This document shows, piece by piece, positions 954 to 9,299 of a DNA stretch of 64,000 nt. A model generated the notes under the pieces. The model was not told where the DNA came from, ran no database searches, and worked only from the letters and a program-made list of their open reading frames with translations. Position 1 is the stretch's first letter. Every line of letters begins with the position of its first letter. A program made the position numbers and the translations under genes. Origin of the DNA: Octopus sinensis (Eukaryota); the NCBI RefSeq assembly GCF_006345805.1, contig NC_042998.1, positions 158,100,001 to 158,164,000 on the forward strand, written 5' to 3'.

Positions 954-1830
954 ACATACTAAACAGATTAGACATTTGGAAAAGAAAAATCCTAAAATCG
1001 TGCTACAACAAGGAACCTTAGATGCCAAGTACCCTGCTAAGTATCCAAGCTGTCCCTAATAACACTGTTTTCTGGAGTTGTACGAGAGTGGGATTTATGT
1101 CTATTTCCTCTATCCATCTGTTCAGATCTTTAGGGATAGTTTCGTGTGCACCTATAACTACTGGGATGCATTTAACCCGCACTTCCCATAGTCTCTGTAA
1201 TTCAATAGCTAGGTCGTGGTACTTTGCTATTTTTTCTATGCTTCTCGTATTAATGTCTTTATAATTTGTCTCTATTATCTGGCACTTTTTATTCTCTTTA
1301 TCTACTACAACCAAATCATGCCTTCTAGCTTCTATTGCTCTAGCTTCTATTGCTCTGTCAGTCTGAATTTTGAAGTCCCACAACATCTTATATTTCTTAC
1401 TTTCTAGCAATTTACTTGGTTCGTGTTCATACCATTGTTCAGTATGTTTAAATCCTAACTTTCTACATAGCTCCCAGTGGATCACTCTCACTAGATTGTC
1501 ATGTCTTTTCTTGCATTCTTTCTGTGCCAGCTGCTGCATTCACTTACTATGTAACACTTTCCTCTTTTGATTTGCATAATCTACATTGGGAATCTACTTG
1601 GTTTTTGTCTATCTTAGCTTTTATCCAATTAGTCCTTAATGCTTGATCTTGTGCAGCTACTAACAAACTTCCCATCTTCAGTACTTCACTCTCCACTACT
1701 TATTTGGTTATAAAATCTCCACTGGTGTGTCTCAAATAATCTATTCTGTTGATTCTGATCTATTCTTTTCTGATATATGGAGAGCTTGCCTGCTACTGTT
1801 ATGATATATTGTTTCAACTTGAATAAGTGG
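954..1830 (-). mobile_element. 5'-truncated R4/Dong-clade non-LTR retrotransposon 3' end (CCHC knuckle plus restriction-like endonuclease), inactive
   Basis: Minus strand reads LLVAAQDQALRTNWIKAKIDK..CRLCKSKEESVT(fs)IVSEC..LAQKECKKRHDN..WYEH..LWDFKIQTD..RHDLVVVDK..EKIAKYHDL..PVVIG..LQKTVLLGTA..VLGI*. Frameshifts are present and the PD motif reads HD. The 3' end runs into (TAA)n. Confidence 0.85.
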
Positions 1831-2857
1831 TTTCACATGAATGGGAATAAATTAAAAATAAAATTAGCGTGCAGAAATGGAATAGTCCAGATGGATAATA
1901 AAAAATTAAATTAAAGAAAAGACTATTGTCTATAAAGTATACAATGTAGAGAAAAAAGATTTGAACACCTGGAGGAAAGCACCATCGAAAAGTGTCTTGG
2001 TGCGACTATGAAAGATATTTAGCCAGAGGCGGTAAATTCGCCACAATAGAACCAAGGTTCGAGTCAACTGAGCGTGCAAGGAAGTATTCGACTCGAACTT
2101 GCAAAGTAGAAATATTTTATTTTTACCTTTATATCTGGGACGTAGGACGTCCCGGATAAAAATTTAAAATGCCCCCTCCCAATAGCAGTAGAGGTAGACT
2201 GGATTGTAGCCACACTTCTATACAAGAGGGAGGACACGATACAATTGATCGAAATTGCAAGAGACGGGCTAACAATTCCAGTCTGTTATATATTTTGAGC
2301 ATTGTTATCACTAGCGATATCAAGATATAACTTTGTATTTTGTATTTTATGTGTAGATGTATATATAGAGATGTACATGTAATATGTACACACATATATA
2401 CACATATATACATGCACTAGCACTATTACCCGGCAACGGTGGGTCATACTGCTAGTATATATATACATGTTCTTCCGTATATGTGTATATGTGTGTGCTC
2501 ATACGTTTGATTGTTTGGATGTATATATGTGTATTGTGAAACTGTTCACTTTAGATTTCATTATACATAATTATATCAAAATTCGATATTTTTGATGTGT
2601 CATCTGCGTGAAAGAATATCTAATGCAAGGAATATGAAATAGCATTGAAATTTAAAATATTATTTGATAATTAATTACCTTAATTTCAAAATAATTTTAA
2701 AATAATTATCTCCTTATAACAACCCTATGTATACAGTTCTGAATATCTATTATAAAATCAATACTACACGTGTACTGACGACCTCCATCGACAGTCCAAA
2801 GTTGTTTCGTACACTTGACACGATATTTTTGTTAAGTAATATATTTTCGTTTCAAGG

Positions 2858-3065
2858 GTGGCTAGCTGTCTGAGTTGTTACCGCGCCGGAGAAAAATGTT
2901 TAGTCACATTTCTTCATGTTTTGCGTTCTGAGTTTATATGTTGCTGAGGTCGACCTCACCATTTATTCTGACAGGTTCAGTAAAATAAGGTCCAGTTGAA
3001 CACTAGGGTTGATGTAATCGACTTCCTACTTATCCCAAAATTTCATGCTTTGCACCTATAGTAGG
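2858..3065 (+). mobile_element. SINE family A copy (in the ABHD8 intron)
   Basis: gctagctgtctgagttgttacc..gttctgagttt..gaggtcgacc..ccagttgaacactagggttgatgtaatcgac..tgcacctatagtag. Confidence 0.75.
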
Positions 3066-3170
3066 TCTTCTCTTTTCATCGCATATTCGATCTTAGTTTC
3101 ACTTTTTCATGGTTCAAACATTAAACACGCTTTCAAATGATTTCCTTTTATCCTTATTTTACTTTTGTAG

Positions 3171-3378
3171 GTCAGCATTCAAGACCAAACAAAAAAACGA
3201 GATGTTGAAGAGGGCTTCCTTTAACATACCGTCTTTTGTTCTGCATTATGTCATCAATGGTCAAGACTGGCCCGAAGGCGATGAAGTCTATCACAGTTGG
3301 ATTAGCGTCCCCACACTACTTATAAACGGTCGAGATGATACTTTTGCCACATTAGAGGATGCTAAGCTAATGAAAGCG
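3171..3378 (+). CDS. ABHD8: ABHD8-like alpha/beta-hydrolase, penultimate exon (phase 2 to 0)
   Basis: Acceptor ttttacttttgtag|g at 3170/3171 and donor gcg|gtgggt at 3378/3379. Peptide SAFKTKQKNEMLKRASFNIPSFVLHYVINGQDWPEGDEVYHSWISVPTLLINGRDDTFATLEDAKLMKA matches the ABHD8 segment FNVSSFVL..GQYWPEGDEVYH..VPVLLVHG..D, recalled from the vertebrate protein. It includes the putative catalytic Asp (GRDD). Confidence 0.9.
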
Positions 3379-4046
3379 GTGGGTATTTTTCTATATAAAC
3401 TGACTATAGATTTTAATTGAGTAAGTACAGCGAAAATATTTCGAGTAATATTGTTGAATAAGGACTCTTGATCACAAATAGATAAAACATCTGCTGAAAT
3501 TTTATCTTTAAATGTAAGTCTTAAAATTGACAGTTACATGCTAGGGCAGGGATCAACACATGAGAAATATCTATGGAATACTTTATTACACTACTTTCCC
3601 AAATATGTTTTAAGATATATTACTTATTGTATATTATTATGATACTTGATGTATAATATCTTTTTATGTCAGTTAACTTGTAATATATCGTTAACTGTTA
3701 TAGTATCTTGTGATGTAGTTTACTTACTGTTTTACGTCTCTCTTGTTAAAAATGGAAGGCGTTTACCTACCTAATCTAGTTATGATTTCGTTTATGTGCA
3801 CTTCCAAAAATTATTAAATCATCCAGTGAAATATATAATAAAAAATACAAATATCAATTCGTCAACATGCTCTTTAGGAAATACTTCACCAAACGTTTCT
3901 CTTGAAAATTAATGGGAAGCGTTTTCTTGTCAACCATTCCAATGCTTCGAATTAATCGATATATTTGAATAAGTAATTGTTTTCTATGTCGTCAATCATT
4001 GTTAAAAATATTTATAATGCCATCGTTTCTTTTATCACTATTTTAG

Positions 4047-5555
4047 ACTATCCACGGATCGAAGCTGGAAATAGTAGATGAGGCTAGCCATATGGTTATG
4101 TTGGAAGCGCCGGACAAAGTGAATAAACTTATTTTGGAATTTATTTGCTCACGTGGATCACATAAACTGCCAGATGTAAAAGAATTGGCTGAAGAAGGAA
4201 TAGAAACACCACAAAGATCAGCGGTGAACGAGAAGCAGTTCGAACCTTCCCAGAAAGGTGAGGAACAAACACCATCTCCTGAGGCTTACACGCACAAATG
4301 GGCCTCGGTACATACAGAAGCCACACCGAGGTGTGCGGAAGAGGAACAGGAGGAAGGAAGGAAACACGAGGAAGAAGAAGAAGAAGAAGAAGAAGAAGAA
4401 GAAGAAGATAATGAGGGTGAAGTAATTATCACGATTCCATCTAAAGCAAGTCCCAGTCAAAAGGAAGGAAACGCTGCGAGATATAGATGCAGGTTAAAGA
4501 AAGGTGTTGTCACTGGTTACGACAATGCTAGTTATGAATATGAAGAATCGGAAGGAGGTTATTATATTTATAAAGACCAATATGGTCAGAGTCATTATGT
4601 GAGTGCAGAAGAGTTCCACGAACTGTTTGATAAATCTAACAAGCAAGTAAATAGCTCGAGCGAAACAAGGAGCGTAAACAATATTGAAGTAAAGAACATG
4701 AATATACCATCATTTGAGGATATTAATATCTTTGAAAATTGTAAAGAATCTTACATTAAAGAATCACAACTGAACAACCAAGAGACAAGTAGCACATGTA
4801 AAAACAAAACCAATGATATCAATATCTTACCGCACAAACTCTCGCAAAATACATTAAAGTCTTCAGACAATAAGTATCCAAAGAGTTTGTCTTCTTTTGA
4901 TGGGAAATGTAAAAACGGCGTGAATAGACAAGAAGTAGATATTAACAGTAAACACAGTCATGGTAACCGTCCAGCAAACACCCAGCCATCTGTCACGTTA
5001 GCCTTGGGACGTCAACGGAGTGACTCACTTGACTATCTTGGTGAAGAAGAATTAATTATTATCACCTCGGTAAAAGAGAAAGAAAAGAATTGTATGTTTT
5101 TGAAAGATTCTTCCCATGAAACAGCGTCAATGAAGAATGTTTCGCAAAATTCGATTCTGAATAAAAGATCTGACTACAGTTCACTAAATAATTCGAAGTC
5201 AAACGAACTTAGCAATTTGCCTGTTAATGTTCAGGCATTACATTCAGAGTTAGTTCAAAAACTCAACACAAAATTAAACCCACAGGAGAGAAAAGATGTT
5301 CGGGAACCAAGCGTTGGAATTAAAGAAACACACAGTATGGGCTCTAATGAAGAGTCAGTTGTAAATCGTAGTGCCTCTTTTTTGGAGTCTAGGAAGCTAA
5401 TGGAAGAACATTTTTCAAAATCAGCATTCAGAATGAGTATGGGTGCTCGTCCGATTATACCACTTCCTGGAGCCCCAATCTACCCTTACAAATCATCTCA
5501 AATCTCCCCAGAGAGACACGAAACTACTAAATCAACCAGCCCAGAATATACTAAG
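4047..5555 (+). CDS. ABHD8: ABHD8-like terminal exon, part 1: end of hydrolase fold plus ~470 aa low-complexity extension
   Basis: Acceptor ctattttag|act at 4046/4047, in phase 0 with the previous exon. Reads TIHGSKLEIVDEASHMVMLEAPDKVNKLILEFI, like ABHD8 ..[25 protein letters not shown] with the catalytic His. The frame stays open through a poly-Glu tract to ~5555 (stop in this frame at 5679-5681). Confidence 0.85.
4368..4407 (+). repeat. Coding (GAA)n tract encoding poly-Glu
   Basis: gag followed by a gaa run, giving HEEEEEEEEEEEEEDNE in frame. Confidence 0.95.
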
Positions 5556-8500
5556 ATTCAAGAGACAATAATAGTAGAAATTCTTCTTTATGCTATGCTG
5601 AGACAAGCATTGTCACAAGCAGTCCGTCTTTCCTACAATCAAAGAAAGCTATTAATGAGCATTTCAGTAAAATTGGATTAAGAAGCCCGCAGTTTTCATC
5701 AACTCCTTTATCTGAGTCCAAGAACTCACGAACTAGCTCCGGCAGCAACATACTTCCAAGAATTAATTCGAGAAAGGAATCAAAAGATATAAGATTATCG
5801 CCAAATAAAATTCAACCTAAGCAAGAAAAGACCTATACAGACACACCAAATAGTCCGTCCAAAACAAGTCTTAGTGTAAGTGAATGGGCAGAACGTCATT
5901 TGCAGACAATATCAGAAATTGTTTTACCAGGTGGCGTGAATTCCACGGAAGGCAGTCCACAAATCAGCCCTAAAGCGTCTTCCCTAACAAGCGATAAAGA
6001 AAGTAAAACTGAAAAACAAATGAGTTTGAAAGATTGGGCAGAAAAGCATTTAAAATTGATTTCGGAATTCATAACTCCGCCAGTTACTCCAGTGAAAAGT
6101 AATTCTCGCAATAACTGCGAAAGCTCTAATGATGATAACGACAGCGAGAAAATTGAAAATAGACTTCCATTAAGTCAATGGGCAGAAAAACATGTAAAAT
6201 TGATCTCAGAAGGAAAGTCTGATATTGCTTCTTCTAGAAATATACCTGTTGACACTGTTAACAATGTTCAATTTGAAAATAATACAAGTAAAACATTAAA
6301 TGTAAGTGAGTGGGCAGAGAGACATGCTCGAAGAGTTTCCAGCATGGCTTCTAATTCGCCAATTGCTTCTGAACCAGATGTCGAGCGAAAGACAATAGAA
6401 GGAAGAAAACAAGAACAGCAAAGTATACAAAATAAACTTAGTGTGAGTGAATGGGCAGAGAGACATGCTCGAAGAGTTTCCAGCATGGTTTCTAATTCGC
6501 CAATTGCTTCTGAACCAGATGTTGAACGAAAGAGAATGGAAAAAAGAAAACAAGAACATCAATGTATACAAAATAAACTTAGTGTGAGTGAATGGGCAGA
6601 GAGACATGCACGAAAAATTTCCAGCATGACTTCTAATGTGACAACTAATCCTATACTTGATTCCCCTCAAAATAATGATGAAAGCAAGAAAAAATATAAA
6701 CCTACTTCAACTGTAAAAATTGCAGAAAGTAATATTAGTATCAAAAATTGGGCCGAAAAACATGTGAATATTATTTCTGAAATGAATTCCAATTTGAACT
6801 CTGGATCAAGACGTAATTCTTTCCAGATAAATAGTTTGTCAGGTGAAAATACATTTAATTCTTCAAAAGTCAGTGAAGACCATCCGAAGATAGAACACAA
6901 AAATAGGTCGCTAGCATCAGATACGCAAACACCGTTTGCTGATAATAGAATATTAAACATGAATTTGCAAATTAGCTCACCCAATGATGCACACTCACCA
7001 AATCATCAAGGGAATGTTTCTAAGGAAGATAAACTTGAATTGCAAAAATATGAAGAAAACCAAATAGATACTCATAGTATTGGTGACCTTCCGGAAGAGA
7101 CTGAAGACTGTGAAAGTAATACTTCGAAATCAACAGAGACAAGAGCCATGGATAAAGTTGATATTAAATTCAAAGACGTAATCGATGAAACCGATAAAAA
7201 TGAATTAATTATACAAGATAAACAAACATACGTTATTGACAGTGACAACAAAGAAATGGAAAATGTAAATGATTCAGAACTAAATCCAGATGTACATAAC
7301 AAGAAGGAAGGAATTGAATTTATGGAAGCTAAAAGTCCAAGACAGAAACTACAAGACGCAAGTACTGATTGTTCTGAAATTTGTGAAGTAGATGAGATAC
7401 CACATCTCAGCAATACAGACCTCAACAGATGGGCAGAACGACATTTTGAAAAGATTCTAGGTGCCCATACACAATCTGATTCGCAAAAACAAATTTCATC
7501 CCAAGTGCAGCAAGATATTTTCGAAGGTGATAAAAGACGAAACAGAAAGGCACATTTAGACAAAAAATCCAATGAACACAGGCGATCTGAAATCATCTCT
7601 GAATCTAGTCAAGCTGAAACAATCCAAAATATTGACAATAAATCAATGACTAAAAAATCGGACTCAAAACCTCCTGAATCAGAATCTGATTCCAGTTCCG
7701 ATATATGCTTTGAATCTTGCTACGAGCATTTTCCCGAATCTCCAACAAATTCTCAGACAAACGATCTTTGTAGTCAGTCTTTTGTTATTGATACAGATGA
7801 TATGGTAAGTGCAGCAGATAATTCACTGACTTCGGATATATTAGGCCAGAGGTTTGTTTTCGACGATAATAGCAATGTAGTTGATTCAGATACTGACATG
7901 TATAGTGATCAGTTTAACCTCGAGGAAATTAGCGTAAAAAGTCACGAACCAGATTCATCAATGACACACGACTCAAATCTAATATCAAAATACGAATCTT
8001 TCACAAATCAGCAATCATCCAATTCTACTACTTCGGTTTTACACTCAACGTGTAATCAATTAAACCTCAGTGAAAATACATTAGCTAGCAGCAAACTACA
8101 AACATTAGATTCTGAAGACACTCAGTCACAACTAGAGATTGAAACTACAGAGATACTTCTAACAGAAGGAACCGTGTTCCACTTAAGCAAAAATAATTCC
8201 AGTCCTACTTCACCCTCTACTCATATCGCGAGTCATTCTCTTACAGATGTCGATAACTCAAACATTACACATCGAAAACATAAACCCTCCTTTGACAGTA
8301 GCCTCAACAACTCGGTTTCTCCAAAGTGCCAAGCCATATCATCATCCAATAATAATGAGGACACAACTGACATAATACAATGTCAAACACTCTCTTTGAG
8401 AGAAGAAAATGTTCTCGAAACAGACAATGACAATAATTTGATCAACAATCCTGAAAACAAGGTCAAATTCGATGATGTAAAAGTGACTGCAGCCATTACT

Positions 8501-8593
8501 GCGAGTACCTCTGCAGTAGAATGTTCAATAAAACCAATAACAACTAATGACGGTTTGCCAAGATTGAAATCTTTTCATATGAACGTACTCTGA
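5555..8593 (+). CDS. ABHD8-like terminal exon, part 2 (-1 frame): ~1,012 aa Ser/Asn/Glu-rich tail with WAE[RK]H repeats
   Basis: The frame of track ORF 5900-8593 is open upstream to 5555 (last stop TAA 5552-5554) and overlaps part 1. Composition is continuous with part 1. 4047-8593 is 4547 nt, exactly 1 nt short of a whole number of codons. Ends TGA 8591-8593. Confidence 0.75.
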   Translation, partial: DSRDNNSRNSSLCYAETSIVTSSPSFLQSKKAINEHFSKIGLRSPQFSSTPLSESKNSRTSSGSNILPRINSRKESKDIRLSPNKIQPKQEKTYTDTPNSPSKTSLSVSEWAERHLQTISEIVLPGGVNSTEGSPQISPKASSLTSDKESKTEKQMSLKDWAEKHLKLISEFITPPVTPVKSNSRNNCESSNDDNDSEKIENRLPLSQWAEKHVKLISEGKSDIASSRNIPVDTVNNVQFENNTSKTLNVSEWAERHARRVSSMASNSPIASEPDVERKTIEGRKQEQQSIQNKLSVSEWAERHARRVSSMVSNSPIASEPDVERKRMEKRKQEHQCIQNKLSVSEWAERHARKISSMTSNVTTNPILDSPQNNDESKKKYKPTSTVKIAESNISIKNWAEKHVNIISEMNSNLNSGSRRNSFQINSLSGENTFNSSKVSEDHPKIEHKNRSLASDTQTPFADNRILNMNLQISSPNDAHSPNHQGNVSKEDKLELQKYEENQIDTHSIGDLPEETEDCESNTSKSTETRAMDKVDIKFKDVIDETDKNELIIQDKQTYVIDSDNKEMENVNDSELNPDVHNKKEGIEFMEAKSPRQKLQDASTDCSEICEVDEIPHLSNTDLNRWAERHFEKILGAHTQSDSQKQISSQVQQDIFEGDKRRNRKAHLDKKSNEHRRSEIISESSQAETIQNIDNKSMTKKSDSKPPESESDSSSDICFESCYEHFPESPTNSQTNDLCSQSFVIDTDDMVSAADNSLTSDILGQRFVFDDNSNVVDSDTDMYSDQFNLEEISVKSHEPDSSMTHDSNLISKYESFTNQQSSNSTTSVLHSTCNQLNLSENTLASSKLQTLDSEDTQSQLEIETTEILLTEGTVFHLSKNNSSPTSPSTHIASHSLTDVDNSNITHRKHKPSFDSSLNNSVSPKCQAISSSNNNEDTTDIIQCQTLSLREENVLETDNDNNLINNPENKVKFDDVKVTAAITASTSAVECSIKPITTNDGLPRLKSFHMNVL
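6296..6630 (+). repeat. Coding tandem repeat, 141-bp (47-aa) unit, ~2.4 copies
   Basis: tgggcagagagacatgc recurs at 6311, 6452 and 6593 (period 141). The first two units are nearly identical at the DNA level. Confidence 0.95.
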
Positions 8594-8660
8594 GTGTCAA
8601 AAGAAACCTGCAATTGAAATCTTGGAACAAGTTGCTTGTCTTCGCAAGCGTTTTTACTTA

Positions 8661-8684
8661 ATATTATTATCAGCTTATCATCAC

Positions 8685-8715
<31 letters not shown>

Positions 8716-8850
8716 GTCGTCGTCGTCGTCGTCCTCTTCCACGTCCTCGTCGTCATCTCATCGCCCCCATCATCATCATCATCGTCGTCGACGTCGTCAT
8801 CATCATCATCATCATCACTGTCGTCGTCGTCATCGTCGTCGCTGTTGTTA
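8661..8850. repeat. (ATC)n/(GTC)n compound microsatellite just after the ABHD8 stop codon
   Basis: Read directly. Confidence 0.9.
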
Positions 8851-9174: not shown

Positions 9175-9222
<48 letters not shown>

Positions 9223-9299
9223 CAGTATTAGTCGTTATCATTTATTTATTTATCAAATGGGCGATGAATCGAGGAACAGTATAGGGACAAATTAAGTGA

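What the first reader, a model, noticed from the sequence alone, without database searches (positions are those of the whole stretch)
4047..8593. ABHD8-like hydrolase fused to a ~1,480-aa disordered tail carrying an unrecognised WAE[RK]H repeat
Seen: the last ABHD8 exon does not stop after the fold (..ILEFI). It continues as a ~4.5 kb exon of S/N/E/K-rich sequence. Eight near-identical helix-like motifs [LIM]-x-[VLI]-x-[EDQN]-W-A-E-[RK]-H-(hydrophobic)xx[IV]S have their Trp codons at 5885, 6035, 6179, 6311, 6452, 6593, 6749 and 7430. The first seven are spaced 44-52 aa apart. A ninth degenerate copy (KWASVH) is at 4299. Every Trp in the tail is in a W-A-x-x-H context, while the linkers between most copies share no sequence. 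Known: vertebrate ABHD8 ends shortly after this His-containing segment. Inference: this is a lineage-specific multivalent docking array of short linear motifs that fold on binding, tethering a lipid hydrolase to a scaffold or repeated partner. I cannot name a matching domain family.
Basis: partly seen in the sequence, partly recalled or inferred. Interest (0 to 1): 0.85.

Follow-up and report, generated by a model that had tools for sequence, protein, structure and literature searches.

The report
Cephalopod ABHD8 tail with WAE[RK]H helices
The last exon of the octopus ABHD8 hydrolase gene encodes a roughly 1,480-residue, mostly disordered tail carrying eight copies of a short, previously undescribed helical motif (…S-E-W-A-E-R/K-H…) that is also found in cuttlefish, but in this assembly a single missing base splits the exon into two reading frames and two mis-annotated genes.

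Summary
The motif array is real. Eight WAE[RK]H motifs sit at exactly the reported coordinates, where composition predicts about 0.0001. They occur nowhere else in the six frames of the window.

The fusion to an ABHD8-type hydrolase is supported. Sepia esculenta RNA-seq transcripts encode one 1,647-aa protein made of an α/β-hydrolase plus a tail with four WAE[RK]H copies. A second Octopus genome reads the whole last exon as one ORF.

One correction is needed. In this window (Octopus sinensis chromosome CM016860.1) the exon is not one ORF. One A is missing at 5553-5555, so the frame shifts. The hydrolase frame stops at 5681 and the array lies in another frame (5555-8593). The public annotation therefore splits the locus into an 895-aa gene and an 842-aa "STAT B-like" gene. 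The downstream frame stays open for 1,012 codons and has dN/dS of about 0.5, so I read the shift as an assembly error or a very recent change.

Pfam, PDB sequences and a motif-profile search of 1.84 billion representative proteins matched no known family. AlphaFold2 places a low-confidence ~16-residue helix on every motif in an otherwise disordered chain.

The best reading is a lineage-specific multivalent helical docking array. Its partner and function are unknown.

The parts
3171..3378 (+). Penultimate coding exon of the ABHD8-type hydrolase (..KQKNEMLKRASFNIPSFVLHYVINGQDWPEGDEVYHSWISVPTLLINGRDDTFATLEDAKLMKA). It contains the candidate catalytic Asp segment (GRDDTF).
   Evidence: 93% identical to Sepia protein residues 284-355. 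The Sepia mRNA aligns to 3171-3378. AG acceptor at 3169-3170 and GT donor at 3379.
3379..4046 (+). Intron (GTGGGT ... TTTTAG).
   Evidence: The Sepia mRNA L001 jumps from 3378 to 4046/4047. Canonical splice sites.
4047..8593 (+). Last coding exon. It encodes the end of the hydrolase fold plus the ~1,480-aa tail. In this assembly a 1-nt gap interrupts it.
   Evidence: Continuous ORF in the orthologous genomic contig L002 and in the Sepia transcript L001. In the window there are two frames, 4047-5681 and 5555-8593.
4047..4145 (+). C-terminal end of the α/β-hydrolase fold (TIHGSKLEIVDEASHMVMLEAPDKVNKLILEFI), including the candidate catalytic His (ASHMV).
   Evidence: Nearly identical in Sepia. 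Lies within the Pfam Abhydrolase_1 match 153-377 of the Sepia protein. AF2 pLDDT 70-74.
4296..4313 (+).
   Evidence: Identical in the second Octopus but has no counterpart in Sepia. Probably not a true copy.
4497..4628 (+). Conserved island KKGVVTGYDNASYEYEESEGGYYIYKDQYGQSHYVSAEEFHELF. Predicted as a small 4-strand β module plus a helix.
   Evidence: Conserved between Octopus and Sepia. AF2 pLDDT 58-70, the only structured part of the proximal tail. No significant Foldseek match.
4989..5066 (+). Most conserved tail island, SVTLALGRQRSDSLDYLGEEELIIIT.
   Evidence: 24 of 26 residues identical between Octopus and Sepia.
5367..5420 (+). First copy of a second repeated motif, RSASFLESRKLMEEHFSK.
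   Evidence: Present in both Octopus species and in Sepia. AF2 helix 443-456.
5553..5555 (+). Frameshift site. The window has ACT AA-GAT where the other Octopus has ATT AAA GAT, so one A is missing.
   Evidence: Pairwise alignment, with a single gap in 241 nt. The frames switch between 5555 and 5679.
5618..5671 (+). Second copy of the SFL..EHFSK motif (SSPSFLQSKKAINEHFSK). It is encoded in the downstream frame, before the stop of the hydrolase frame.
   Evidence: Conserved in the second Octopus and in Sepia. This shows that the frame starting at 5555 is the biological one.
5679..5681 (+). TAA that ends the hydrolase frame in this assembly. It is the end of the 895-aa public gene model.
5870..5917 (+). 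Motif copy 1, LSVSEWAERHLQTISE.
   Evidence: AF2 helix. The Sepia position is decayed (SLSVSESAEKRRKRESE).
6020..6067 (+). Motif copy 2, MSLKDWAEKHLKLISE. Its Met is the start of the public 842-aa model.
   Evidence: Aligns to Sepia copy 1. AF2 helix.
6164..6211 (+). Motif copy 3, LPLSQWAEKHVKLISE.
   Evidence: Aligns to Sepia copy 2. AF2 helix.
6301..6637 (+). 141-bp (47-aa) tandem repeat, 2.4 units at 91% identity. It carries motif copies 4-6 (W at 6311, 6452, 6593; LNVSEWAERHARRVSS, LSVSEWAERHARRVSS, LSVSEWAERHARKISS).
   Evidence: TRF. The other Octopus has one unit fewer. Copy 6 aligns to Sepia copy 3.
6734..6781 (+). Motif copy 7, ISIKNWAEKHVNIISE.
   Evidence: Aligns to Sepia copy 4. 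AF2 helix.
7415..7462 (+). Motif copy 8, TDLNRWAERHFEKILG. This is an isolated distal copy.
   Evidence: Conserved in the second Octopus, with no Sepia counterpart.
7859..7897 (+). Conserved distal island FDDNSNVVDSDTD.
   Evidence: FDDNSNVV is shared with Sepia.
8591..8593 (+). Stop codon TGA at the end of the tail.
   Evidence: It is the same end (..SFHMNVL*) as in the second Octopus.

Best explanation
Region 4047-8593 is the 3'-terminal coding exon of the Octopus sinensis orthologue of ABHD8. In coleoid cephalopods (shown here for Octopus and Sepia) this α/β-hydrolase carries a C-terminal extension of about 1,260-1,480 residues. The extension is mostly disordered and rich in S, N, E and K.

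The extension contains short islands conserved over the octopus-cuttlefish split. The most striking is an array of 4-8 copies of a ~16-residue motif, [LMI]-S-[LVI]-[SN]-[ED]-W-A-E-[RK]-H-φ-x-x-[IV]-S-[ES].

Inferred mechanism: each copy is a short amphipathic helix.
- An N-cap Ser or Asn sits at -2.
- Possible i/i+4 pairs are E(-1)/R-K(+3), E(+2)/K-R(+6) and W(0)/H(+4).
- The apolar stripe runs through -3, 0/+1, +4/+5, +8 and +11.

Each helix is proposed to act as a docking peptide. The array would then make the protein a multivalent tether or scaffold for a partner that has many binding sites or is oligomeric. Copy number changes by tandem duplication of a 47-aa unit.

In this assembly a 1-nt deletion at 5553-5555 breaks the exon. 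It is most likely an assembly error, and it caused the public annotation to split the gene in two.

Shown: the gene structure, the fusion, the motif conservation, the absence of a match in any family library searched, and the helix-in-disorder prediction. Inferred: protein docking, multivalency as the function, and the nature of the partner.
For: Identity and gene model:
- The window is identical to O. sinensis CM016860.1.
- Public models are an 895-aa gene ending at window 5681 and an 842-aa 'STAT B-like' gene at 6020-8593.

Fusion:
- The Sepia esculenta larval RNA-seq contig L001 encodes a 1,647-aa ORF with Pfam Abhydrolase_1/6 at 153-382 and a tail with four WAE[RK]H copies.
- The 90%-identity cluster holds seven 1,647-aa Logan-derived members, counting this protein.
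- A cluster member is annotated 'ABHD8 [Sepia pharaonis]'.

Frameshift:
- There is a single 1-nt gap against genomic contig L002, whose ORF is continuous.
- The motif SSPSFLQSKKAINEHFSK, conserved in Sepia, is encoded in the downstream frame before the stop of the upstream frame.
- 1,012 codons carry no stop (P about 1e-33 from composition).
- About 14 new stops would be expected if the frame had been neutral for 0.1 substitutions per site.
- dN/dS is 0.50 with dS 0.21.

Motif:
- Eight exact matches against about 1e-4 expected.
- W and H are invariant, E is 18/19, A is 17/19 and [IV] at +8 is 19/19 across 19 copies from three species.
- Synonymous codon differences between copies (GCA/GCC, GAA/GAG, CGT/AGA/CGA/AAA/AAG) show conservation at the protein level.
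- Four copies are positionally conserved between Octopus and Sepia although the linkers diverge. Identity to Sepia is 53/136 (39%) across the eight Octopus motif windows, against 281/1345 (21%) in the rest of the tail.

Structure:
- AF2 gives mean pLDDT 41.7, with helices starting 3 residues before each Trp, at 13-28, 63-78, 111-127, 155-170, 183-218, 249-265 and 294-320.
- The hydrophobic moment is 0.43-0.69.

No known family:
- Pfam gives nothing.
- PDB sequences give nothing.
- The profile search of 1.84e9 representatives returns only the two Octopus proteins. The other three hits lack the motif.

Context: mammalian ABHD8 is described as a scaffold that recruits zDHHC12 to NLRP3 (PMC13625376).
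Against: - No partner is known and no binding was tested.
- Between the two Octopus species the motif is not clearly more constrained than the linkers (dN/dS 0.45 versus 0.50).
- AF2 confidence on the helices is only 44-74, from a 3-sequence alignment.
- Three of the eight copies are a recent duplication, so the number of copies maintained by selection may be nearer 4-5.
- One copy has decayed in Sepia and two copies carry substitutions in the other Octopus (WEERH, WTKRH), so individual copies are dispensable.
- The frameshift could be real in O. sinensis. Reads were not available.
- The representative-library search did not return the Sepia proteins, which are known positives. Its negative result for other taxa is therefore weak.
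Confidence: 0.6

Rival explanations
1. The motifs are membrane- or lipid-droplet-binding amphipathic helices with an interfacial Trp anchor. They would hold the hydrolase on a lipid surface rather than dock to a protein.
For: Hydrophobic moment of 0.43-0.69 with a clear apolar stripe. Helices are predicted only at the motifs. The catalytic domain belongs to a superfamily with many lipases.
Against: Mean hydrophobicity is low, from -0.41 to +0.20. The helices are only ~16 residues long. Five consecutive residues (W-A-E-[RK]-H) are conserved around the whole helix circumference, including an invariant His in the middle of the apolar face and an almost invariant Glu. Generic lipid-binding helices do not show this pattern. 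ABHD8 has no demonstrated lipid substrate.
Confidence: 0.13
2. The helices are 'stickers' that bind each other or fold back on the hydrolase domain. They would drive self-assembly or condensation, or auto-regulate the catalytic domain, with no external partner.
For: Sticker-and-spacer architecture, with conserved helices separated by 30-35 residues of non-conserved polar linker. Copy number varies between species: 8, 7 and 4.
Against: AF2 shows no packing between helices (pTM 0.17). Docking to the hydrolase domain could not be tested here.
Confidence: 0.1
3. The motif is a variant PP2A-B56 docking site of the LxxIxE type. L(-3)-x-x-W-A-E fits the ELM pattern L..[IVLWC].E, and in some copies a second match lies at +5..+10 (LKLISE, LQTISE).
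For: L..W.E is present in 11 of 19 copies, including all four Sepia copies. A second LxxIxE match is present in 5 of 19. The ELM pattern is recalled from memory and is consistent with the ELM-server matches listed in PMC7926987 Table 4.
Against: Position -3 is V or I in 8 of 19 copies. The invariant His and the [RK] are not part of the B56 motif. B56 peptides bind in an extended form, whereas these are predicted helical. LxxIxE patterns are frequent false positives.
Confidence: 0.06
4. The frameshift is genuine in O. sinensis. The hydrolase protein then ends at 5681, and the array is either an untranslated relic or a separate gene starting at the Met of 6020, as annotated.
For: The assembly sequence itself shows it. 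The public annotation has two models. No O. sinensis transcript-derived protein spanning the site was returned.
Against: There are 1,012 stop-free codons (P about 1e-33), and about 1.4 stops would be expected after only 1% neutral divergence. dN/dS is 0.5. The other Octopus and Sepia read through. A conserved motif straddles the overlap in the downstream frame. The 'STAT B-like' name has no domain support.
Confidence: 0.07
5. The array is a neutral product of tandem duplication in a low-complexity exon and has no motif-specific function.
For: Copies 4-6 are a recent 141-bp tandem repeat. dN/dS of motif and linker are similar within Octopus.
Against: The other five copies share no DNA similarity outside the motif and use different codons. 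Four copies are retained in Sepia at orthologous positions while the linkers have diverged beyond recognition.
Confidence: 0.04

Closest known systems
Vertebrate ABHD8 (α/β-hydrolase domain-containing protein 8)
   Same: The same catalytic-domain family. The Sepia orthologue matches Pfam Abhydrolase_1/6 and Hydrolase_4 and has GHSYG. A cluster member is annotated ABHD8. The window encodes the last ~105 residues of the fold, including the ..ASHMVMLE.P..VN.L segment. Mammalian ABHD8 is described as a scaffold rather than a proven enzyme.
   Different: From general knowledge, not tested here: vertebrate ABHD8 (human, about 440 aa) ends shortly after the fold. The cephalopod protein adds about 1,260-1,480 disordered residues with the WAE[RK]H array and other conserved islands.
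Arrays of short linear or helical docking motifs in disordered regions (for example Sfi1 centrin-binding repeats, GW182 Trp 'Ago hooks', kinesin-light-chain W-acidic motifs)
   Same: Repeated Trp-centred peptides separated by non-conserved linkers in a disordered chain. Copy number is variable.
   Different: The sequence pattern fits none of them. W-acidic, LIR, PAM2 and centrin W..L...L patterns each match 0 of 19 copies. The invariant W-x-x-x-H pair and the A-E-[RK] core are not described for any family in Pfam or among PDB chains.
PP2A-B56 LxxIxE docking motif (ELM DOC_PP2A_B56_1)
   Same: L-x-x-W-x-E at -3..+2 fits the ELM pattern in 11 of 19 copies. Some copies have a second LxxIxE match.
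   Different: The pattern is not met in 8 of 19 copies. The invariant His and [RK] are unexplained. The predicted conformation is helical rather than extended.
PAM2 motif (PABP MLLE-binding, L-N-x-x-A-x-x-F-x-P)
   Same: The same spacing, L-[NS]-x-x-A-x-x-aromatic-like, is present in 8 of 19 copies.
   Different: The defining Phe is replaced by an invariant His, and the position-5 and Pro requirements are not met. There are 0 of 19 regex matches.

Membership tests
ABHD8 / α/β-hydrolase fold | α/β-hydrolase domain detectable by profile | tested here: met
   Sepia orthologue P0003: Abhydrolase_1 E=5.7e-22 at 153-377, Abhydrolase_6, Hydrolase_4. Generic α/β-hydrolase PDB matches. The window itself holds only the last two exons, which are 93% identical to Sepia residues 284-355, and it gives no Pfam hit on its own.
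ABHD8 / α/β-hydrolase fold | Catalytic nucleophile GxSxG plus the Asp and His segments | tested here: inconclusive
   GHSYG, GREDTF and ASHMV are present in the Sepia protein. GRDDTF and ASHMV are present in the window. The Ser exon lies upstream of the window. The triad assignment is by eye and was not checked by structural alignment.
ABHD8 / α/β-hydrolase fold | Orthology to vertebrate ABHD8 rather than another ABHD | not tested
   Rests only on the source annotation 'ABHD8 [Sepia pharaonis]' of cluster member P0008. No phylogeny or reciprocal search was possible. The third homologue search returned only 3 proteins.
Any curated repeat or domain family (Pfam-A) | Profile match above the gathering threshold in the tail | tested here: not met
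   Only sub-threshold noise for window 4047-5678 and 5555-8590. Nothing in the P0002 tail, and nothing in the P0003 tail beyond the hydrolase domain.
STAT (the name given to the public 842-aa model) | STAT domains (STAT_int, STAT_alpha, STAT_bind, SH2) | tested here: not met
   No STAT or SH2 Pfam match in 5555-8590. The name is best explained by low-complexity similarity.
PP2A-B56 LxxIxE SLiM | ([LMFYWIC]..I.E)|(L..[IVLWC].E) in a disordered region | tested here: inconclusive
   11 of 19 copies fit at -3..+2 and 5 of 19 at +5..+10. The pattern is taken from memory and is consistent with the ELM matches in PMC7926987. Binding is not testable here.
Kinesin light chain W-acidic motif | [LMTIV]-[DE]-W-[DE] | tested here: not met
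   0 of 19 copies. Position +1 is Ala in 17 of 19.
LIR / Atg8-interacting motif | [WFY]-x-x-[LIV] | tested here: not met
   0 of 19 copies. Position +3 is always R or K.
PAM2 | [LFP][NS][PIVTAFL].A..[FYW] | tested here: not met
   0 of 19 copies. His replaces the defining aromatic residue.
Transposable element or separate gene | TE protein domains, or an independent transcript | tested here: not met
   No TE domains. The tail is contiguous with the hydrolase in the Sepia mRNA and in the L002 genomic ORF.

The most novel reading that the evidence does not exclude
WAE[RK]H helices are a previously undescribed class of docking motif, recognised by a dedicated partner domain. Coleoid cephalopods would have used it to turn the small, poorly understood ABHD8 into a giant multivalent scaffold. 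Valency would be tuned by tandem duplication, and perhaps by pH or phosphorylation, given the invariant His, the RRVSS/RKISS sites in copies 4-6 and the conserved Ser at +9.
Probability: 0.35. Interest if true: 0.6.

Novelty: new variant of a known kind. Interest (0 to 1): 0.45.

Why it matters
ABHD8 is one of the least understood ABHD proteins. Its only described activity in mammals is scaffolding. A lineage in which the same catalytic domain is welded to a long tail with a clean, repeated and conserved peptide motif offers a direct experimental handle. Peptide pull-downs could reveal what ABHD8 is brought to, and that may also inform the vertebrate protein.

The motif is not in Pfam or the PDB. 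If a partner exists, it would define a new motif-domain pair.

On the practical side, the result corrects a public annotation. Two O. sinensis gene models, an 895-aa ABHD8-like gene and an 842-aa 'STAT B-like' gene, are one gene split by a probable 1-nt assembly error.

Tried and rejected
A doubled-motif alignment (A2) found 99 candidates and no hit. It did not even return the known positives, so that search is uninformative.
2. The third homologue search, with full-length Sepia P0003, returned only itself, P0002 and an ostracod chimeric model, P0004. The distribution in squid, Nautilus and other molluscs therefore could not be established.
3. The exhaustive motif-profile search gave three marginal hits, P0005-P0007 (E about 1e-4). 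Reading them shows unrelated repeats without W-A-E-[RK]-H, so they were rejected. This search also failed to return the Sepia proteins, so absence elsewhere is weak evidence.
4. The full-text search for WAERH, WAEKH and related strings hit only author names such as 'Waerhaug'.
5. The PDB sequence search with the motif profile gave only chance matches to a cupin (ERHVRFISE, E about 4).
6. Foldseek on the low-confidence proximal-tail model gave no significant match. The best E was 0.23, to small Tudor/SH3-like barrels.
7. Programmed -1 ribosomal frameshifting at 5553 was considered and rejected. There is no slippery heptamer (TAT ACT AAG ATT), and the orthologue is simply in frame.
8. A small intron that would restore the frame between 5555 and 5679 was considered and rejected. 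The orthologous genomic sequence is collinear with a single 1-nt gap, and a conserved motif is encoded inside that interval.
9. The species of contig L002 (SRR11869394) could not be identified from the paper library.

Full report
**1. What is in the sequence**

The window is identical to Octopus sinensis chromosome CM016860.1 (GCA_006345805.1). Window position 1 corresponds to about 158,090,001.

Translation of the reported interval confirms the observation at the motif level. There are eight W-A-E-[RK]-H motifs, with Trp codons at 5885, 6035, 6179, 6311, 6452, 6593, 6749 and 7430, plus KWASVH at 4299. These nine are the only Trp residues in the tail. The first seven are 44-52 residues apart.

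From the tail's own composition about 1.3e-4 matches are expected. Only 4 of 20,000 shuffles gave even one match. No other match exists in any of the six frames of the 64-kb window.

The tail after ..ILEFI is 1,481 residues long. It is rich in S, N, E and K.

**2. The exon is not one ORF here**

- The hydrolase frame is open from 4047 and stops at TAA 5679-5681.
- The array is in another frame, open from 5555 to TGA 8591-8593.
- A genomic contig from a second Octopus species (L002, from SRR11869394, 87-88% nucleotide identity including the intron) is collinear from 2637 to 8694. It reads the whole exon as one ORF.
- In a 241-nt alignment across the switch there is exactly one gap. The window has ACTAA-GATTC where L002 has ATTAAAGATTC, so one A is missing at 5553-5555.

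The public annotation follows the broken frame. It has an 895-aa gene ending at window 5681 and a separate 842-aa 'signal transducer and activator of transcription B-like' protein starting at the Met of motif copy 2, at 6020. That name has no domain support.

I judge the missing base to be an assembly error, or at most a very recent or polymorphic change, for four reasons:
- The downstream frame has 1,012 codons without a stop (P about 1e-33 from composition). The other two frames carry 62 and 140 stops.
- About 14 stops would have arisen after 0.1 neutral substitutions per site, and about 1.4 after 0.01.
- dN/dS against L002 is 0.50, with dS 0.21.
- The conserved peptide SSPSFLQSKKAINEHFSK (5618-5671), shared with Sepia, is encoded in the downstream frame before the stop of the upstream frame.

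Programmed frameshifting and a small intron were considered and rejected.

**3. The fusion to the hydrolase is real**

The window holds only the last two coding exons, 3171-3378 and 4047 onward. The junction has canonical GT/AG sites.

A 5,459-nt contig assembled from Sepia esculenta larval RNA-seq (SRR20545812; data availability statement of PMC10466719) encodes one 1,647-aa protein. It has an N-terminal region, an α/β-hydrolase domain (Pfam Abhydrolase_1 E=5.7e-22, residues 153-377; GHSYG) and a tail of roughly 1,260 residues. This mRNA aligns to window 3171-3378 and then directly to 4046-4212, which confirms the splice.

The 90%-identity cluster holds seven 1,647-aa Logan-derived members, counting this one. 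It also contains a GenBank protein named 'ABHD8 [Sepia pharaonis]' (CAE1309496.1) with the same tail.

The assignment to ABHD8 rather than another ABHD rests on that annotation, and on my recollection of the vertebrate C-terminal sequence. I could not test orthology, because the third homologue search returned almost nothing.

**4. Anatomy of the tail**

A four-way alignment (O. sinensis, second Octopus, S. esculenta, S. pharaonis) shows short conserved islands in a sea of unalignable sequence:
- A block at 4497-4628 (YDNASYE..YY.YKDQYG..HYVSA).
- IP.FEDI.
- SVTLALGRQRSDSLDYLGEEELIIIT (4989-5066), with 24 of 26 residues identical between Octopus and Sepia.
- Two copies of S.SFL[EQ]S[KR]K...EHFSK (5367-5420 and 5618-5671).
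- The WAE[RK]H copies.
- FDDNSNVV (7859-7897).

AlphaFold2 on the proximal tail gives mean pLDDT 38. Only the end of the hydrolase fold and a ~45-residue β module at 4497-4628 (pLDDT 58-70) are above noise. Foldseek finds nothing significant for it.

**5. The motif**

Nineteen copies from three species give the profile [LMI](-5) S(-4) [LVI](-3) [SN](-2) [ED](-1) W A E [RK] H φ(+5) x x [IV](+8) S(+9) [ES](+10). Conservation is as follows:
- W and H are invariant.
- E is present in 18 of 19 copies.
- A is present in 17 of 19.
- [IV] at +8 is present in 19 of 19.

Copies use different synonymous codons. Except for copies 4-6, they share no DNA similarity outside the motif. Copies 4-6 are a 141-bp tandem repeat at 91% identity, and the other Octopus has one unit fewer.

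Sepia copies 1-4 align positionally to Octopus copies 2, 3, 6 and 7. The Sepia position corresponding to Octopus copy 1 has decayed to SLSVSESAEKRRKRESE. Copies are therefore gained by tandem duplication and occasionally lost, while a core of about four has been kept since the octopus-cuttlefish split.

AlphaFold2 on the array gives mean pLDDT 41.7 and pTM 0.17, from a 3-sequence alignment. It predicts a helix starting three residues before every Trp and running about 16 residues, with everything else unstructured.

The helical hydrophobic moment is 0.43-0.69 with low mean hydrophobicity. On a helix, -3, 0/+1, +4/+5, +8 and +11 form one stripe. W(0) and H(+4) are neighbours on it. E(-1)/[RK](+3) and E(+2)/[KR](+6) can form i/i+4 salt bridges, and S or N at -2 is a typical N-cap. 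That last reading is inference from general helix rules.

**6. Comparison with known families**

- Pfam gives no match for the tail in any of the three proteins.
- A motif profile against all PDB chain sequences gives only chance hits.
- An exhaustive HMMER search with a 34-column motif profile against 1.84 billion cluster representatives returned only the two Octopus proteins (E about 1e-89) and three marginal hits. The marginal hits, on reading, lack the motif.

One caveat applies to that search. The Sepia proteins, which are known positives, were not returned. The library therefore does not contain every relative, and absence in other taxa is weak evidence.

Pattern tests on the 19 copies gave the following:

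| Pattern | Copies matching |
|---|---|
| Kinesin-light-chain W-acidic | 0 |
| LIR | 0 |
| PAM2 | 0 |
| Centrin W..L...L | 0 |
| PP2A-B56-type L..W.E | 11 |
| Second LxxIxE at +5..+10 | 5 |

The B56 pattern is recalled from ELM and is consistent with the matches listed in PMC7926987. It does not explain the invariant His and [RK], and it fails in 8 copies. I keep it only as a minor rival.

**7. How it most likely works**

Shown:
- The tail is a conserved, translated, mostly disordered extension of a hydrolase-fold protein.
- It carries an array of short, conserved, helix-prone peptides unknown to the family libraries searched.

Inferred:
- Each helix is a docking element.
- The array gives multivalent attachment to a partner with many sites or an oligomeric partner.
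- This extends a scaffolding role that is the only function so far described for mammalian ABHD8, namely recruiting zDHHC12 to NLRP3 (review PMC13625376).

The same review stresses that ABHD8 has no established lipid or protein substrate.

The rivals are membrane-binding amphipathic helices, self-association or auto-regulation, B56 docking, a genuinely frameshifted and untranslated array in O. sinensis, and neutral repeat expansion. Each is scored in the report sections.

Evidence within Octopus does not single out the motif (dN/dS 0.45 versus 0.50). The argument for motif-specific selection comes from the deep Octopus-Sepia comparison.

**8. Verdict**

It is unproven for function.

I rate this a new variant of a known kind, namely a lineage-specific disordered extension carrying an array of short helical motifs. 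Interest is moderate. It offers a clean handle on an obscure protein, but lineage-specific disordered tails with orphan motifs are common, and nothing here yet points to a partner.

Noticed in passing
window 5553-5555, 5679-5681, 6020: A 1-nt gap relative to a second Octopus genome splits one gene into two public gene models: an 895-aa gene ending at 5681 and an 842-aa 'STAT B-like' protein starting at 6020. The STAT name has no Pfam support.
   Followed up: yes
It is present twice in both Octopus species and twice in Sepia. AF2 predicts the first copy as a helix. It matches no Pfam family.
   Followed up: partly
window 4989-5066: SVTLALGRQRSDSLDYLGEEELIIIT is the most conserved tail island, with 24 of 26 residues identical between Octopus and Sepia. 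By eye it contains a basophilic-kinase-type RxRxxS site and an acid-flanked LIII run that resembles a SUMO-interaction motif. Both are resemblances from memory and were not tested.
   Followed up: no
window 4497-4628: AF2 predicts a conserved ~45-residue segment (..GYDNASYEYEESEGGYYIYKDQYGQSHYVSAEEFHELF) as a four-strand β module plus a helix (pLDDT 58-70). It is the only structured element in the proximal tail. Foldseek against the PDB gave only non-significant hits to small Tudor/SH3-like barrels (best E 0.23).
   Followed up: partly
window 8132-8176: The public 842-aa model omits 15 residues (LEIETTEILLTEGTV) as if they were a 45-nt intron. The segment is in frame and conserved in the second Octopus, so the omission looks like an annotation artefact.
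   Followed up: partly
L002-encoded protein P0002, residues ~263 and 607/798: The second Octopus has an inserted RWEETH (again a W-x-x-x-H spacing) in the proximal tail. It also has substituted copies WEERH and WTKRH, which shows that A(+1) and E(+2) are not absolutely required.
   Followed up: no
L001 / P0003 residues ~1066-1082: In Sepia, the position orthologous to Octopus motif copy 1 reads SLSVSESAEKRRKRESE. The flank is conserved, but W has become S and H has become R. This looks like a decayed copy.
   Followed up: partly
window 4371-4408; 8677-8841; 9176-9232: Microsatellites: (GAA)12.7 encoding the poly-Glu run inside the tail, (ATC)n/(GTC)n about 85 nt after the stop codon, and (AGT)19 further downstream.
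   Followed up: no
window 1018-1539 (-): A 173-aa ORF on the minus strand, upstream of exon 3171-3378, that looks like a fragment of a repeated invertebrate element (..RHDLVVVDKENKKCQIIE..). It has no Pfam match above noise.
   Followed up: partly
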